Part shown: positions 16,742-64,000 of the stretch, one piece after another | Layout of the letters: each line of letters starts with the position of its first letter | How positions within the stretch are numbered: position 1 is the stretch's first letter | NCBI RefSeq assembly: GCF_021869535.1 | Contig: NW_026262679.1 | Span: 37,138,001 to 37,202,000 of the forward strand | Source: Mytilus californianus | Taxonomy: Eukaryota | Reading direction: 5' to 3' | DNA length: 64,000 nucleotides | The notes under the pieces: generated by a model | Database searches by the model: none | The model's input: the letters and a program-made list of their open reading frames with translations, nothing else | What the model was told of the DNA's origin: nothing | Translations under genes and position numbers: made by a program

Positions 16742-16783
16742 CACCAGATGTGCGTTTCGACAATTATTGTCTCTTCAGTGACA
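16742..16783 (-). ncRNA. Solo minimal type-I hammerhead (GACA/TGTC stem II type), degenerate
   Basis: TGTCA-CTGAAGA-GACA-ATAAT-TGTC-GAAA-CGCACA-TC-TGGTG; core intact, C-A mismatch in stem III. Confidence 0.7.
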
Positions 16784-34624: not shown

Positions 34625-35080
34625 TGTGCTCCAAATGGTAAAAACTCATCAAAGATACCAGGCATATCATTTAATGATAATCTAGACGTTCGTTACGTCT
34701 ACACAAAACTCGCCAGTGGCAATCAAATCAAAAATAGTTGGCCAAATTAAGTACGAAGTGAAAGACCATTAAACACACACAATTCCGAAAAGATGTACAA
34801 AATAGGCTAAGGAAATCGATGACTGAGGGTAGAAAATTCTTAATGTATAATTGTTATTTTATTACGGAAAACATTACAGAAAATTATCATATTAATGATA
34901 ATTGATGTCAAAACAAAAGTGGCGACTACTTGGCTGGTGATACCCTCGAGGACGAAAGATCCACCAGCAGTGGTGGCATCGCCCCAGTGGTTGTAAAACT
35001 CACCAAAGATACGAGGCACATAATTTGGTACCCCAAACGCACGTTTCGTCTAATCAAGACTCATCAGTGACAATCCGAAA
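34625..35080 (-). mobile_element. Retrozyme-like repeat, about 1.3 units of 351 bp, with two hammerhead motifs
   Basis: Hammerhead at 35031-35072 (TGTCA-CTGATGA-GTCT-TGATT-AGAC-GAAA-CGTGCG-TT-TGGGG); decayed copy 351 bp away at about 34682-34721. Confidence 0.75.
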
Positions 35081-50864: not shown

Positions 50865-51212
50865 CAAATTTCATGCGTCCGAAGCGCTTTTCTGGATTAA
50901 CCTTCATCAAGAACGGTAAAAGCTGAAACAGTTGAAGAGCTATATGACCAAAAAGGACCTAAAAATAGCAAAATCTATCTAAGGTCAACTTTGCCAGAGG
51001 CAGTTGAAACCTTAGTTTCTTATAATTTCAAAATTTATTAACGGACAATTTTAGAAAGGTTTGTTGTAAATCATGTCAGTACCGAAGTACTGACTACTGA
51101 GATGATGATACTCTCGGGAACTTATAGTCCACCAGCAGAGGTATCGACCCAGTGCTGTAAAAAATGAAAACAACAGATCATAAATTTTATGCGTCCGAAG
51201 CGCTTTTCTGGA
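50865..51212 (-). mobile_element. Retrozyme-like repeat, 316-bp unit, with a variant hammerhead at 50876-50915
   Basis: CGTTC-TTGATGA-AGGTTAATCCA-GAAA-AGCGCT-TC-GGACG; the 3' half of the motif recurs 316 bp away (51189-51212). Confidence 0.7.
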
Positions 51213-56990: not shown

Positions 56991-58794
56991 TGAATACCTC
57001 TATCGTAACTAGCTATATATAGTGAATAATGAAATTGGTACTTTGATAAAAATAAAACCCCAAAAAATCAGTTATAATTTCTTCAGTCATGCATGACCAG
57101 GGAAGATGATTCCTTGGTCCTAAAATATCTAAATGCTGTCAAACAAATTTATGTGAGTATCCCAATTATGATGAAATTTACACTCGGGAACTCGTTGTTA
57201 TCACAAACAAAAACATTCTGATATCGAAGAATCACAAGTATTTTATAGAGAACTATTTTAGTTCTAAATTGTTTTAACAGCTTACACTTAATAGTCTACA
57301 CATGGTAACAAAGATCAATTTCAATGTTTTGTCGACTTCTAAAGTGTTGAATTTAATAAAAATCTATAAAATAAACAGTTCAAATGCTACCTAAGACAAA
57401 TTCTACTGCACAGAAGTACATTATTTGTCTTTATAAATTTATACTTACTTTATATAGATGTTTCATTAGAATTTCATTATTTTGATTGCCAAGAACAATC
57501 ACTCGGTGTTCTAATATGATGTTTTATTTCGCAATAAGACGCAACATCCATGACTGCACGCTCTCTCCATGACAATGTTACAACAATATGTAGGAATATT
57601 TAAAACAAAACAAAATAAAAGCTTTTTTATTAATCTTTCTACATAAAAATGTAATTATACGAAATGAATGCTTCTTTTTTGTAGCTTTATAAGGTTTTAA
57701 AAGTGTTACAGTGCACACATTTTAAGTATGAATCTGTGCTTCACACAAAATGTGGTTAATAACGCTTTTATATCGCAATAAAACTACAACAAAAAGCATT
57801 CATTTGTTATAAAACATCTATTTTTTTTAAACAAAAACGATACTTGAACTTGAATAACTAGAAATAATAATTGCACTAAAAGAAAAATCAAATGTAGTCA
57901 TACAGCCATCGTTAGCCATGTTTTTAGTTCCTATATCCTATTATAGTACTACCATCTTAATATATAACATCGATCAATATACTTCATATGTACATGAATT
58001 CATATAACAGTCTTACGATTTTCTGTTTTATGGAGATTTGATGGTTGGAGGGAAAATTATTATCTTATTTCCAATACTTGCTCAAAGCATGTAGTGGACA
58101 TTTATTGCTTTCTTTTGTCCTCAAAACTACCGTTTCTAAGATACATTTTCAAAAGATAGAATCACAAAACAACAGGTACTAATTAAACCATCTCAAAGAA
58201 GAAATCAGCGGAAAACACGTGTCTGTCTTTATTTTGCTCTAAGCTTGTTAGTTGACAAATGTAACTGAACAAAGTGATAATTTAATGTGAAACGATCGAT
58301 GAAATAAATACAAAGAAATAAACGGTAATGTGGACACCATCGTAATTCCTTCACAATAACATCAGGTGGCGAGCTAATATGTAACCAAGCTCTTAAAGAA
58401 TATATTCTTAAGAAGTGGAAGAAAAAATAAAAGTATGGGAAAATATGAAAGATATTATATATGTGTATCATATATAACTTTTTTTGCTGATTGCTACTTC
58501 ACGGGAAAGATAATTATTTTGCCTTTCATTTCTTTTATTTGTTGTTTATATACCGTTTTTTGGTTTAATGTGCAATAATTGAAGCAGATGTGTACGAGAC
58601 ATACCCGACAGTTAGAACAATCTTGAGGTCAAGGTATTTGGTTTTGAATGAGAAGATGTATTTCCAATGGAATATGTCTAACTTGAATGTAAAGTTGTAT
58701 AGTAAGACGTTTTGTCTTCTTTAACAACGATTTTTGTAATAGATCCCATGAATCTCTGCTTCTTTGGATTTCAATAGTAAACTAGGTATCACTA

Positions 58795-58838
58795 ACATCA
58801 CTGAAGAGACATTAATTGTCGAAATTCGGATATGGTGT
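58795..58838 (+). ncRNA. Minimal type-I hammerhead ribozyme 1
   Basis: ACATCA-CTGAAGA-GACA-TTAAT-TGTC-GAAA-T-TCGG-A-TA^-TGGTGT; predicted cut after 58832. Confidence 0.85.
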
Positions 58839-59233
58839 ATACAAATCTTTGCACCTCATGTTTGCGGTATACCATCTTTCCCGCAAGTTTATTGTTTTCT
58901 GTTTGGTATTAAATTAATTATTAAGATTCATTTTGTTACATCTGGTGATCCGTTTATTTGGCAATCGCCATGGCAGTCAGCAGGGTTTAAGAACATCTGT
59001 TGTTCGACCTGCTAGTCAAATGCGTTTTGTTAAAATTTACTTTTTCACTTTTTTGGTCTTTTGGAAAGTGTTGTTTGTGCTGTATTTAGACCCCTCTACC
59101 AAGAAATTTGTTTTGTATGCACACGTATACAAATTACGGTTTTTATCCAACGCAATCATAGGTTTGAACGTTGTTTTCAATTTAGACTTGTATAGTATAT
59201 ATATATGGCCTTCCAAATACCGTTTCGATTCCT

Positions 59234-59279
59234 TACATCACTGAAGAGACAATAATTGTCGAAATCCGGATATGGTGTA
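59234..59279 (+). ncRNA. Minimal type-I hammerhead ribozyme 2
   Basis: TACATCA-CTGAAGA-GACA-ATAAT-TGTC-GAAA-T-CCGG-A-TA^-TGGTGTA; palindromic ATCCGGAT stem-loop III; cut after 59272. Confidence 0.88.
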
Positions 59280-59744
59280 CTAATTTTTGCACTTTTTGTT
59301 TGCGGTATACCATCTTTTCCGCAAGTTTATTGTTTTCTGTTTGATATTTAATTAATATTTAAGATTCATTTTGTTACATCTGGTGATCCGTTTATTTGGC
59401 AATCGCCAAAGGCAGTCCGCAAGGTTTAAGAGCATCCGTTGTTCGACCTGCTAGTCAAATGCGTTTTGTTAAAATATACTTTTCACTTTTTTTTTGTCTT
59501 TTGGAAAATGTTGTTTGTGCTGTATTTAGACCCCTCTACCAAGAAATTTGTTTTGCATGCACACGTATAAAAATTACGGTTTTTATCCAACGCAATCATA
59601 GGTTTGAACGTTGTTTTCAATTTAGACTTGTTTATATTTTTTCGTTTGGGCTTGTATTATATTTTCTTTCGGGTTTATATGATCCGTTCATCCTACTAAA
59701 TTGAGGTAAATTATATGGCCTTCTAAATACCGTTTCGGTTCCTA

Positions 59745-59788
59745 ACATCACTGAAGAGACATTAATTGTCGAAATGTGGATATGGTGT
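59745..59788 (+). ncRNA. Minimal type-I hammerhead ribozyme 3
   Basis: ACATCA-CTGAAGA-GACA-TTAAT-TGTC-GAAA-T-GTGG-A-TA^-TGGTGT; cut after 59782. Confidence 0.85.
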
Positions 59789-60602
59789 ACTAATTTTTAC
59801 ACTTTTTGTTTGCGGTATACCATCTTTTCCGCAAGTTTATTGTTTTCTGTTTGGTATTAAATTAATAGCTAAGATCCATTTTGTTACATCTGGTGATCCG
59901 TTTATTTGACAATCGCCAATGGCAGTCAGCAGGGTTTAAGAACATCCGTTGTTCGACCTGCTAGTCAAATGCGATTTGTTAAAATATACATTTTCACTTT
60001 TTTTGGTCTTTTGGAAAATGTTGTTTGTGCTGTATTTAGACCCCATTACCAAGAAATTTGTTTTGCATGCACACGTATAAAAAGTTTTTATCCAACGCAA
60101 TCATAGGTTTGAACGTTGTTTTCAATTTAGACTTGTATATATATATGTTTATGTACTTTTGATCCCCGGTGTATCATTAAACAAGTAATCAGTACACTCG
60201 CATTAACACTTGCATATATATTTATACAAAATTTTAAATACAATAGAACTCAAAGAACAATTAATGAAAATTAAAAATATTCCACCTGCGTTTTCACAAT
60301 AAATTGTTTACAGTCCAGTGTACTTCTTTTGGGACTAATTATATTAAAAATATAGAAAAGGCTACCAAATCGAACTCAAATAATGGACAATATTATGTTT
60401 ATGGGGTCTTTAATCAAGTTTGACAGCTTCAGACATATTAATTTTTTACCCTTTTCAACAGGACCAAATCACTACTTTACCTTGGAATTCATGACCCATT
60501 TTTTGTACATGTCATTTTATTCTCCTACTCACTATTCATTATGTAAGAAATAATGTTGGTTGGTGTATGAAATATTTTGCAAGTTCTACATTTTCCCCTC
60601 AA

Positions 60603-60872
60603 GGGACCATATTTATGAAAGGACATGCTAACTGTGTTCTCGGATCACGACACTATCCTTTACCAATAAGCCAAATAAAAAAGAAAGACAAACAACAACT
60701 CATAAACCATGCATCAACTCGAATAATCCCGTTAAAAATTGATGAGTGTTCCATGTCATGCCCAAACCAATGGTTACATTTTTTGATTTTCCGTAAAGGA
60801 GAAAAGGATATTTTTCCCATTGCCTTTTCTCCTAACTTTTCTTATGTTATTGAGAGATATGGGCATTCATAA
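60603..60872 (+). CDS. Possible terminal exon of an unknown gene (GTIFMKGHANCVLGSRHYPLP...ERYGHS*)
   Basis: Longest clean open frame outside recognised repeats (ORF track 60567-60872); pyrimidine-rich acceptor TTTTCCCCTCAAG; no recognisable domain. Confidence 0.25.
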   Translation, partial: GTIFMKGHANCVLGSRHYPLPISQIKKKDKQQLINHASTRIIPLKIDECSMSCPNQWLHFLIFRKGEKDIFPIAFSPNFSYVIERYGHS

Positions 60873-61377
60873 TATAAATAAGAAACAAACGCAAAATTGT
60901 TGAAAGTTTCTACGATTGCCGTTTAATTTCTGTGAAATCTTTTACATTGTGAATATACATAGTCTAAATTAGAAATGATAAATATTTTTCAGTGAAGTGC
61001 CTGCAAAAAAAGTATCACAGACGAACGTTGCCTTTAAAACGAAGTGATACGAAAACTACAACAAGAAAAACCTAAAGCCAGTTCATATTTTGGTCAACCA
61101 ATTTTACTTGGACTTCACACGTAAATAGACAGAAGAGTAAATGTCTAAATCTGTTCAAAGCTAAGATTTATAATTACGGTTCATCAGATCTTTCACAAAA
61201 TATTGTTTGAAAACTGTAGTAGTAAAAGATAATTCGGAAACCGCATTTCTCCAGTTTTTTTACTCTTTCACCAAAATTGTCGATAGCTTTAGCGTAATAT
61301 TCACTGTGGTTTATTTGATAGATTTGATACAACAGTAGTTGAACGATGTTCAAATCTCTTAAATTCATTTAGAAGTA

Positions 61378-62260: not shown

Positions 62261-64000
62261 TAATATGCGTGTAGAACGATTGACATTATGGTTGGATTTT
62301 CATGATTTAGGTCCTTATTTTTTCACATCGTGTTACAGGGTCATCAAATAGAAACATACTGTACTAGGAACGTAAACTTGTTGTTTTGAATAGAAGTCAT
62401 ATTGTTTCATAAATGCCAACTTAACTATGATAATTTTTAGTAACACGATTGATCCACAAAGATGTCGTTTTAAAGACTTTTACTTAACCTGAACTCAAAA
62501 GAACATCCTTCGGGAAAACAATCTTTCAATGATACATTTTAAATCGATTGAACAAATGTTGATTGTAAATCCTTGTAAGAAATAAAAAAATATACACCAA
62601 GAAGTACATCATCAAGTTATTAAATTCAACTTAATGTTTGATGAAGAAGTCTTTTTATGTAATGGCAATGTTTTCATTGGCTTATTCTGTCAATATGTAT
62701 TCAAAAGACATTTGTTATAGATTGACGTGCTATATTCAACATGCAAGATGTTCAGAACCAACAAATATTACCAAAACTTCAATGTCAATAACAATATGAA
62801 AATAAAAGAGTTGTAATCAACCAAAGCAAAATAAAACCTGAAGGAGATTTGTATTTTATCTTTAGATGATGGTTTTATTGGTAATGTAATATTCTAACTA
62901 ACATAAAAAAAAAGTTGTAATTTTTGTTGACCGCAAAAGCTCAATTTATAAAAACAAGGAATTATACTTTATCGATTGTCATAGTCATAGTAATAGAAAA
63001 CGACAGTTATATAAAAAAACAATGTGTAATCTAGTTATAACTATGTTAGGTGTATGTTTCATTAAGTCTCGGCAATTTGATTGGCTTCAAAGCAACCATA
63101 TGATTTTAAATCTACTCTTTCCAATTCAACGTAACACATATGCCTACTTTTTGACCGAAACATATTTTGTATGAAGCGCGGAAGAACTCCATACTAAAAA
63201 TGTTCACACGTTTAAGATTTTTACATCCCTATGAAATTACAGAAAGAAGCACTTAATTGTTCTAAATATATTTGTATGCTACAGCCATGAAACTACACTT
63301 TAAATCAATCCTTTCGATTGTTTTTCCCTCCATTGTTTTAACGTTGTCACGGAGATCTCGTGCAGTCAAAGATGTTGCGTTTTAAAGGAAATACAATATA
63401 AGAACGTCTCGGCCAATTAAAAATAAGGAATCGTAAGAAACTTCTTCGCATGTAGTTATTCAAAGATAAAGTGCATGCATCCATGCCAATGTCTTTTAAA
63501 GCAACAGTGTTGATTCCGATGTAGGAATTTGTCAAAACAATAAACGAAAAATAAATAGGTGTTAGTTTATTGATATTTTTTTCTTATTTTATCTGCAAAG
63601 TGTGATTTTAATAATTGAATACATGTTTTTTAATAGGTAAAAATCATTGACTTGAATACAGGTGTGTTTGACCAAACGTATAAATCTAGCATTAAGCGCA
63701 TTTATTAATTATATAAATTATGTTCCTTCAAAGGGTTCATGATATCCAATTAAAAAGACAAAGAAATAAAGTAAAAGAATATACTGCTAACTAGTACTAT
63801 TCTTCACGGCAATGACTGATGTGGGATTATAAAAATATTAGAAATGAGGCATAGAATCATGAAACTGTTAGATTATAGTGCTAAAATGCCATGCACATTT
63901 TAGCCTTTCTTTTTGCAAAATTACTTTTAGAAATGCCTTTCTGTACAAAGCTTGAGCCTTTTATTATCTTACGATATGGCATGGGTTTTTAACATTGTTG

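What the first reader, a model, noticed from the sequence alone, without database searches (positions are those of the whole stretch)
58792..60138. Retrozyme-like trimer with three intact minimal hammerheads
Each unit starts with a complete core (CTGAAGA / GACA-TGTC stem II / GAAA / AUA triplet / 6-7-bp stem I). Predicted cleavage releases monomers of 440 nt (58833-59272) and 510 nt (59273-59782; about 70-bp insertion near 59630-59710). The array begins at stem I of the first ribozyme. Metazoan retrozymes with minimal type-I hammerheads that give circular RNAs are established, including in mussels. I cannot tell whether this unit, with its CTGAAGA core and AUA triplet, is among the described families. 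Loop III differs between units (TCGG, CCGG, GTGG) and only unit 2 is fully palindromic.
Basis: partly seen in the sequence, partly recalled or inferred. Interest (0 to 1): 0.8.

Follow-up and report, generated by a model that had tools for sequence, protein, structure and literature searches.

The report
Composite mussel hammerhead retrozyme insertion
This is an old, two-piece insertion of a very abundant non-coding mussel jumping element whose repeats each carry a hammerhead (self-cutting RNA) motif; the class is already known, this family seems undescribed, and its insertion scars point to copying by a Penelope-type reverse transcriptase.

Summary
Window 58793-60146 (+) carries 2.9 head-to-tail units, each with a complete type-I hammerhead (HHR) whose predicted cuts fall after 58832, 59272 and 59782.

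It is one copy of a huge family in this 1.65-Gb Mytilus-type genome: 11,261 exact HHRs, against 4,245 of the published mussel retrozyme HHR. The true unit is about 537 nt, so neither window unit is typical. The 510-nt unit lacks 31 nt that RNA reads carry. The 440-nt "unit" is a chimeric joint: the (TA)n tail of one 5'-truncated copy abuts the truncated start of the next.

Genome-wide, copies share one 3' end (...TTTAGACTTGT + (TA)n; 3,753 exact junctions, against 2-5 at control sites). Their 5' ends are scattered, they sit in (TA)n, and they often have inverted partner copies. This matches target-primed reverse transcription with internal initiation, as in Penelope-like elements. Neither DNA ends nor RNA read ends pile up at the cleavage sites.

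RNA of the family exists, and one library is strand-biased towards the ribozyme strand. Cleavage, circles and transcription of this locus are not shown.

Verdict: a new family of a known kind (metazoan non-LTR retrozymes). This scan reached the same class for this family on other DNA of this genome.

The parts
58793..59201 (+). Segment A: a 5'-truncated copy running from family-unit position 497 through HHR 1 to the family's canonical 3' end (...TTTAGACTTGT) plus a short TA-rich tail. The joint with segment B lies somewhere in 59192-59206.
   Evidence: BLAST against a natural 537-nt unit. The junction differs from those of the other short-unit loci L002-L004.
59202..60146 (+). Segment B: 1.75 units running from about unit position 467 (TATATGGCC...) through HHR 2, a near-complete inter-unit region and HHR 3, to the canonical 3' end plus (TA)n.
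   Evidence: Units 2 and 3 share 5 derived states absent from unit 1.
58795..58838 (+). Hammerhead 1, loop III UCGG, predicted cut after 58832. The U in the loop creates a competing helix with the CUGAA core (MFE -12.9 against -2.8 kcal/mol for the active fold).
59235..59278 (+). Hammerhead 2, loop III CCGG (the family-typical form), predicted cut after 59272. It contains the palindrome AUCCGGAU. The homodimer MFE is a double hammerhead with an 8-bp stem III.
59745..59788 (+). Hammerhead 3, loop III GUGG, predicted cut after 59782. The core is intact but the stem III palindrome is broken.
59637..59740 (+). Inter-unit region, present only in copies longer than one unit. It lies downstream of the reverse-transcription start site and upstream of the next HHR. 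At 59695/59696 it lacks 31 nt that RNA reads and other genomic copies have.
   Evidence: joint 59695/59696 with 31 letters between, 18 reads in X24.
60124..60146 (+). Canonical family 3' end (TTCAATTTAGACTTGT) followed by (TA)n. This is the site where reverse transcription started.
   Evidence: 3,753 exact junctions of this form in the genome, against 5, 4 and 2 at control sites.

Best explanation
**What it is.** The stretch is an old, composite insertion of a non-autonomous, non-coding retroelement of the metazoan non-LTR retrozyme class. Its units are 5.5-6.6% diverged from the family majority.

**How the family works (steps 1-2 inferred by analogy, step 3 shown by genomic scars).**
1. Source arrays of 537-nt units are transcribed on the ribozyme strand.
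2. The type-I hammerhead has only a 2-bp stem III with a palindromic loop region. It most likely cuts as a double hammerhead in multimeric RNA. The monomers are then most likely ligated into circles, as shown for the published mussel retrozyme.
3. A Penelope-like element's reverse transcriptase/endonuclease nicks a (TA)n microsatellite. It starts cDNA synthesis at one fixed internal site of the RNA (after ...UUUAGACUUGU, 362 nt past the cleavage site). It runs across the intact or religated hammerhead junction for a variable distance, often more than one unit, and stops at random. Sometimes an inverted twin copy results.

**My commitments.** I take a circular template copied in rolling-circle fashion as somewhat more likely than an uncleaved linear multimer. 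The window locus looks like two such cDNA pieces joined through a (TA)n tail. They arose either by a second insertion into the tail of the first or by a template switch.
For: HHR anatomy is complete in all three units.

The family is large, and its copies sit 2-4% from the majority sequence:
- 11,261 exact HHRs, with arrays of 537-540-nt period;
- median divergence of sampled copies from the majority of 3.6%.

Insertion scars:
- 3,753 exact canonical 3' junctions, against 5 at the HHR cleavage site, 4 at another AUA site and 2 at the neighbouring CTTGTATTATAT repeat.
- In 40 loci picked by the HHR pattern alone, 28 of 51 segments end at unit positions 350-367, and 25 of those are followed by (TA)>=3. 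Their 5' ends are scattered over the whole unit. 28 have (TA) at the 5' joint. 13 of the 40 loci carry an adjacent inverted segment.

No ORF, tRNA or Rfam family was found.

RNA evidence:
- Reads cover the family while the flanks read zero.
- In X44 the first mate lies mostly on the minus strand, for example 568 against 18.
- Reads carry the inter-unit region, including the 31 nt missing here.

Literature:
- The published mussel retrozyme HHR has the same stem III design, cleaves in vitro and gives abundant circles (PMC7229834).
- Naiad and Neptune PLEs prefer (TA)n and leave inverted and partial-tandem copies (PMC8557442).
- A purified PLE starts reverse transcription at fixed internal sites and does not need HHR cleavage (PMC11167929).
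- Vertebrate non-LTR retrozymes have been linked to PLE pLTRs (bioRxiv 10.64898/2026.07.22.740005).
Against: - Self-cleavage and circular RNA were not tested. No read ends pile up at the three predicted cut sites.
- 5' ends of DNA copies are not enriched at the cleavage site: 83 against 53 at a control TGG site.
- X24 reads are not strand-biased. With 11,000 genomic copies, a trace of DNA could produce that depth.
- No autonomous partner was identified. The one PLE 3' end seen beside a copy (L012) shares no significant similarity.
- The predicted circular fold is no more stable than shuffles (z -1.6 to +0.1), unlike the 'highly self-paired' published retrozymes.
- In the BLAST-picked copies the HHR is not more conserved than the body (2.1% against 2.6%). 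The copies therefore decay neutrally.
- No Rfam hammerhead model matches.
Confidence: 0.8

Rival explanations
1. Same element class, different template. DNA copies are made from uncleaved linear multimeric transcripts of source arrays by internal initiation. Hammerhead cleavage and circles play no part in mobility, and the HHR is a passenger inherited from a PLE pLTR.
For: A purified PLE uses unprocessed RNA and does not need HHR cleavage, and its RNA-seq shows no ends at the HHR site (PMC11167929). The same holds here: no read ends at the cut sites and no excess of DNA 5' or 3' ends at the cleavage site. The three window units differ from one another by about 8-9%, which fits a heterogeneous multimer template as well as age.
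Against: The published mussel retrozyme RNA is mostly circular in vivo (PMC7229834). The same HHR module is kept on unrelated bodies, which suggests that it is needed. The consensus HHR keeps a perfect 8-nt palindrome suited to dimeric cleavage.
Confidence: 0.35
2. Ordinary satellite DNA that spreads only by DNA-level processes (unequal crossing-over, segmental duplication). Its hammerhead-like motif is a relic without activity.
For: Long arrays exist, for example more than 20 units at C1:4.54 Mb. Genomic copies decay neutrally. No cleavage data exist.
Against: Thousands of dispersed copies share one 3' end, have random 5' truncation, sit in (TA)n and have inverted twins. DNA-level satellite expansion does not produce this. 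Strand-biased RNA is present.
Confidence: 0.05
3. The units are the terminal repeats (pLTRs) of an autonomous Penelope-like element, not a separate non-autonomous family.
For: PLE pLTRs carry minimal type-I HHRs and form partial tandems (PMC4209133, PMC8557442). The genome holds at least 1,480 GIY-YIG candidates.
Against: No ORF of 130 aa or more lies within about 4.8 kb upstream (from window 54000) or 3.9 kb downstream (to the window end at 64000) of the array. Arrays repeat every 537-540 nt with nothing between the units.
Confidence: 0.05
4. The three motifs are chance matches to the hammerhead consensus.
For: The loose pattern alone occurs 15 times in the window against about 6 expected. 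Rfam models do not match.
Against: All three stems plus the core are present in each unit. There are 11,261 exact copies against 0 for the reversed control.
Confidence: 0.01

Closest known systems
Mytilus galloprovincialis non-LTR retrozyme (Mg353; HHR A/B) of Cervera & de la Pena 2020 (PMC7229834)
   Same: Same genus-level host: the published HHR occurs 4,245 times in this genome, and a published primer matches window 34921-34949. Both are tandem, AT-rich and non-coding. Both carry a type-I HHR with a 6-bp stem I ending ...UCA/UGG..., a 4-bp stem II, and a 2-bp stem III with a 4-nt palindromic loop region.
   Different: The HHR sequence differs: CUGAAGA/GACA..UGUC/AUCCGGAUA here, against CUGAUGA/GUCU..AGAC/ACGCGCGUC. 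The cleavage triplet is AUA, not GUC. The unit is 537 nt, not 350-390. The bodies share no detectable similarity. This family has about 2.7 times more HHR copies. Its predicted fold is not unusually stable.
Penelope-like elements (Naiad/Neptune/Poseidon), their pLTR hammerheads and insertion mode (PMC8557442, PMC4209133, PMC11167929)
   Same: Shared features: (TA)n target preference, 5' truncation, adjacent inverted copies, partial tandems, a fixed internal start of reverse transcription, and a minimal type-I HHR suited to dimeric cleavage.
   Different: No RT/EN ORF is present. Only one start site is used, so there is no optional 30-40-bp 'tail'. No PLE with a related terminal sequence was found.
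Amphibian satellite 2 and axolotl retrozymes, and vertebrate non-LTR retrozymes (PMC7229834; bioRxiv 10.64898/2026.07.22.740005)
   Same: Tandem HHR units that need dimeric hammerheads for efficient cutting. A PLE origin or PLE mobilisation has been proposed for them.
   Different: Different phylum and sequence. Here the PLE link rests on insertion scars, not on pLTR homology.

Membership tests
Hammerhead ribozyme, type I | Conserved core CUGANGA ... GAAA ... UH with an A15.1-U16.1 pair | tested here: met
   All three units show it: CUGAAGA, GAAA and the AUA triplet.
Hammerhead ribozyme, type I | Three helices around the core, with stem I open and stems II and III closed by loops | tested here: met
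   Stem I is 6-7 bp, stem II 4-5 bp and stem III 2 bp plus a 4-nt loop. The monomer's active fold is weak (-2 to -4 kcal/mol). The dimer fold of the consensus type is the MFE.
Hammerhead ribozyme, type I | Match to the curated Rfam hammerhead covariance models | tested here: not met
   No hit at the gathering threshold or at E<=10 on 58000-61000. Short-stem-III variants may be poorly covered by the models, but I did not check that here.
Hammerhead ribozyme, type I | Site-specific self-cleavage | not testable with these tools
   RNA reads show no pile-up of ends at the sites. That result is uninformative if the RNA is circular or uncleaved.
Metazoan non-LTR retrozymes | Short tandem repeats, each with a type-I HHR, low GC, and no ORF, LTR, PBS or PPT | tested here: met
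   (GC 0.33-0.35). The 537-nt unit exceeds the published 170-400 nt range.
Metazoan non-LTR retrozymes | [quoted passage not shown] | tested here: inconclusive
   Family RNA is present and strand-biased in X44. Circularity and unit length were not testable.
Metazoan non-LTR retrozymes | Highly self-paired predicted circular RNA | tested here: not met
   The circular MFE has z -1.6 to +0.1 against dinucleotide shuffles, with 58-66% of bases paired.
Published Mytilus retrozyme family (Mg353, HHR A/B) | Sequence similarity of the HHR and the body | tested here: not met
   The HHR sequence differs. BLAST of the family unit against the window finds nothing at the published-type copy near 34.9-35.1 kb.
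Autonomous Penelope-like element | An RT plus GIY-YIG ORF between the repeats | tested here: not met
   No ORF of 130 aa or more lies between window 54000 and 64000. Units follow each other directly.
PLE-mobilised non-autonomous element | (TA)n target, one fixed internal RT start, 5' truncation, inverted twin copies | tested here: met
   compared with PMC8557442 and PMC11167929.
PLE-mobilised non-autonomous element | Terminal sequence shared with an autonomous PLE of the same genome | tested here: inconclusive
   Only one neighbouring PLE 3' UTR (L012) could be compared. It showed no significant similarity.
SINE (pol III-derived) | A tRNA, 5S or 7SL-derived head | tested here: not met
   ARAGORN found none. 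Rfam found none.

The most novel reading that the evidence does not exclude
The 3,753 dispersed junctions are natural fossils of site-specific internal initiation by a PLE reverse transcriptase on a non-coding, probably circular, ribozyme RNA. The start site would be chosen by recognition of the RNA, not by (TA) microhomology: neighbouring UAUAU-type sites are used about 1,000-fold less. Rolling-circle copying would create the arrays in one step. If so, this family would be a tractable natural system for identifying the RNA signal and the partner PLE, and for settling whether animal retrozymes move through circles.
Probability: 0.35. Interest if true: 0.5.

Novelty: new member of a known kind. 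Interest (0 to 1): 0.3.

Why it matters
Animal retrozymes are known, and a link to Penelope-like elements has been proposed. That link rests mainly on co-occurrence and, in vertebrates, on pLTR similarity.

This family outnumbers the published mussel HHR motif about 2.7-fold by exact-pattern count in this genome. Its thousands of dispersed junctions give unusually clean insertion scars: one internal start of reverse transcription, (TA)n targets and inverted twins. These match the biochemistry reported for a purified PLE.

That makes two things testable: which PLE mobilises the family, and whether the template is a circle.

For this locus the practical message is narrower. The predicted 440- and 510-nt RNAs are locus-specific variants, not the family's 537-nt RNA.

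Tried and rejected
- **Rfam.** No hammerhead hit at the gathering threshold on the whole window or at E<=10 on 58000-61000.
- **tRNA or SINE head.** None found.
- **Fossils of in-vivo cleavage.** DNA 5' ends at the cut site joined to (TA) number 83, against 53 at a control site. DNA 3' ends at the cut site number 5, against 4 at a control. There is no enrichment.
- **A second PLE-like 'tail' start site** at the neighbouring 25-nt repeat. Only 2 junctions were found, so this is rejected.
- **Structure at the RT start site.** z = +0.55, so no unusual structure.
- **Viroid-like compact circular fold.** Not supported.
- **Extra conservation of the HHR among genomic copies.** Not seen in the BLAST-picked set. 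The apparent excess in L031-L070 is a selection artefact, because those loci were picked by the HHR pattern.
- **Autonomous partner, route 1.** I followed the same HHR core on other bodies. It has 159 dispersed copies, shares only 70-120 nt, and has no RT-sized ORF within 1.5 kb.
- **Autonomous partner, route 2.** I compared the 3' UTR of a PLE lying tail-to-tail with a copy in L012. The best local alignment is no better than shuffles.
- **GIY-YIG scan.** It listed PLE places, but the DNA could no longer be fetched.
- **Literature search for the HHR sequence strings.** It found only unrelated primers.
- **Locus-specific transcription.** It cannot be separated from the family signal.
Full report
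**1. Observation**

Window 58793-60146 (+) holds 2.9 head-to-tail units. Each unit opens with a complete type-I hammerhead (HHR):
- stem I, ACAUCA paired with UGGUGU;
- CUGAAGA;
- stem II, GACA/UGUC;
- GAAA;
- a 2-bp stem III with a 4-nt loop (UCGG, CCGG, GUGG);
- the triplet AUA.

The predicted cuts fall after 58832, 59272 and 59782.

Chance is excluded. The exact family HHR occurs 11,261 times in the genome and its reversed control 0 times. No Rfam hammerhead model matches, even at E<=10, so this is an atypical short-stem-III variant.

**2. The host and the published relatives**

The genome has 1.65 Gb in 175 contigs. It contains 4,245 exact copies of the HHR of the published Mytilus galloprovincialis retrozyme Mg353 (sequence from the supplement of PMC7229834). 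A published primer for that element matches window 34921-34949, next to such an HHR at 35035-35067 on the minus strand.

That paper reports about 5,000 HHRs in two nearly identical ribozyme families within 350-390-bp repeats. The family studied here is different:
- it has another HHR sequence;
- its unit is 537 nt;
- its body has no similarity to the published-type copy;
- it has about 2.7 times more HHR copies.

I found no paper in the held library that gives its sequence.

**3. The family unit and what the window units are**

Arrays elsewhere repeat every 537-540 nt.

Window unit 2 (510 nt) is close to full length, but it lacks 31 nt at 59695/59696. Other genomic copies and 18 RNA reads of X24 carry those 31 nt.

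The 440-nt interval is not a shortened unit but a joint. Upstream, the sequence runs to the family's standard insertion end (...TTTAGACTTGT) followed by a TA-rich tail. The next piece then begins at TATATGGCC.

The few other loci with short intervals have their own, different junctions:
- L002 has a long (TA)n plus extra letters;
- L003 has (TA)n;
- L004 has another start point.

These joints therefore arose independently.

Units 2 and 3 share five derived states that unit 1 lacks, against one and zero for the other two pairs. By a multinomial estimate worked by hand, not by a tool, this has p of about 0.05.

I read the locus as two cDNA pieces, 58793 to about 59201 and about 59202 to 60146. 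They were joined through a (TA)n tail, either by a second insertion into the first tail or by a template switch. All three units are 5.5-6.6% from the family majority, against a family median of 3.6%. This is therefore a rather old copy.

**4. How the family spreads (shown by scars)**

I fetched 40 loci chosen only by the HHR pattern along one contig, and compared them with a natural 537-nt unit. The results:
- 28 of 51 segments end at unit positions 350-367, where a random end would give 3%;
- 25 of these are followed by (TA)>=3;
- the 5' ends are spread over the whole unit;
- 28 have (TA) at the 5' joint;
- segment lengths run continuously from 215 to 2,749 nt;
- 13 of the 40 loci have an adjacent inverted segment, head-to-head or tail-to-tail across a (TA)n.

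Genome-wide, the exact junction TTCAATTTAGACTTGT[A/T]TATATATAT occurs 3,753 times. The control junctions are rare:

| Junction site | Exact count |
|---|---|
| Canonical 3' end | 3,753 |
| HHR cleavage site | 5 |
| Another AUA site | 4 |
| Neighbouring 25-nt repeat ending CTTGTATTATAT | 2 |

Reverse transcription therefore starts at one specific internal site, and (TA) microhomology alone does not explain the choice.

This set of features matches what is described for Penelope-like elements (PLEs):
- (TA)n targets, 5' truncation and inverted and partial-tandem copies (PMC8557442);
- initiation at fixed internal sites of the RNA by a purified PLE protein (PMC11167929).

A 2026 preprint links vertebrate non-LTR retrozymes to PLE pLTRs.

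**5. Ribozyme function (inferred)**

The monomeric active fold is weak, at -2 to -4 kcal/mol. For the family-typical unit 2, the minimum-energy homodimer is exactly a double hammerhead with an 8-bp stem III formed by AUCCGGAU. Its energy is -25.1 kcal/mol, against -16.6 for two monomers.

Unit 1's loop change creates a competing helix with the core. Unit 3 breaks the palindrome.

The published mussel HHR has the same stem III design and cleaves in vitro.

Genomic copies do not conserve the HHR more than the body (2.1% against 2.6% in the BLAST-picked set). This is expected of dead copies. However, the same HHR module sits on unrelated bodies:
- a 159-copy dispersed family, with one copy at window 16747-16778 on the minus strand;
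- reads with other flanks.

That argues the module matters.

**6. RNA**

Raw RNA reads of two runs cover the family at depths of 10-500, while both flanks read zero.

In X44 the first mates lie mostly on the minus strand. If this is a dUTP-type library, the RNA has the ribozyme's polarity. This is an inference, because the library type is recorded only as 'other'.

X24 shows no strand bias. With 11,000 genomic copies, a trace of DNA could explain its depth.

No read ends pile up at the cut sites, and DNA copies show no excess of 5' ends there (83 against 53 at a control site). The templates therefore had an intact or religated HHR junction, meaning either circles or uncleaved multimers. The data do not decide between them.

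I lean towards circles because the published mussel retrozyme RNA is mostly circular. Against this, the PLE biochemistry shows that cleavage is dispensable.

The predicted circular fold is not unusually stable.

**7. What was not found**

No ORF, tRNA or Rfam family lies in or beside the array.

No autonomous partner was found. One PLE 3' end lying tail-to-tail with a copy at the same (TA)n (L012) has no significant similarity. A GIY-YIG scan listed many PLE places, including arrays with open 755-aa frames. Their DNA could no longer be fetched.

**8. Verdict**

The retrozyme reading is right as to class, but the predicted 440- and 510-nt circles are locus-specific oddities of a composite, aged insertion.

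The family is a new member of a known kind. Earlier notes of this scan on other DNA of this genome reached the same class and the same Penelope-type insertion reading. I reached it independently and then tested it with counts.

Interest is modest. The cleanest new point is the single, highly specific internal start site of reverse transcription, documented by thousands of junctions.

Noticed in passing
window 16747-16778 (-), body to about 16300: A second hammerhead with the same core and stem II (CUGAAGA, GACAAUAAUUGUC) but another stem III, an AUC triplet and another body (UGGUGCAGUAAAAUU...). Its family has 159 exact, dispersed copies that share only about 70-120 nt around the HHR, with no RT-sized ORF within 1.5 kb (longest stop-to-stop frame 181 aa). 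RNA reads with this continuation exist.
   Followed up: partly
window 34921-35067 (-): A copy of the published Mytilus retrozyme type. Its HHR is CTGATGAGTCTTGATTAGACGAAACGTGCGTT. Published primer 110R matches at 34921-34949 with 3 mismatches.
   Followed up: partly
window 50865-51212: A repeat of about 317 nt, flagged by another first-stage note (s1-307277). By eye, 51060-51150 resembles the reverse complement of the 3' part of the published Mg353 body. I did not test this with a tool.
   Followed up: no
window 59202-59283, reads of run X44: In another, coded organism (D), a strongly expressed, strand-biased RNA shares only this 80-nt hammerhead module. It continues into unrelated sequence on both sides (350 and 222 reads with loose ends). 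The ribozyme module appears to move between bodies and species.
   Followed up: no
window 59614-59665: A 24-25-nt internal tandem duplication that repeats the RT-start motif (...CTTGT[T/A]T[T]ATAT). The second copy is almost never used as an insertion end: 2 junctions against 3,753.
   Followed up: yes
L012:316-960 (G000:C88:19117735-19118380): The 3' end of a Penelope-like element with a C-terminal GIY-YIG domain and a hammerhead-core-like CTGACGA stretch in its 3' UTR. It ends in the same (TA)n as a retrozyme copy on the opposite strand (tail-to-tail).
   Followed up: partly
G000:C110:55838761-55860851: GIY-YIG matches with open frames of 755 aa. The first five are spaced exactly 3,927 nt apart on one strand, and a sixth lies further on, on the other strand. 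This looks like a young tandem PLE array and is a candidate active PLE. Its DNA could not be fetched.
   Followed up: no
L032, L033, L041 (G000:C1:0.54, 0.98 and 3.49 Mb): Retrozyme segments on opposite strands facing each other across short spacers or (TA)n. This is the inverted-copy arrangement drawn for PLE insertions.
   Followed up: partly
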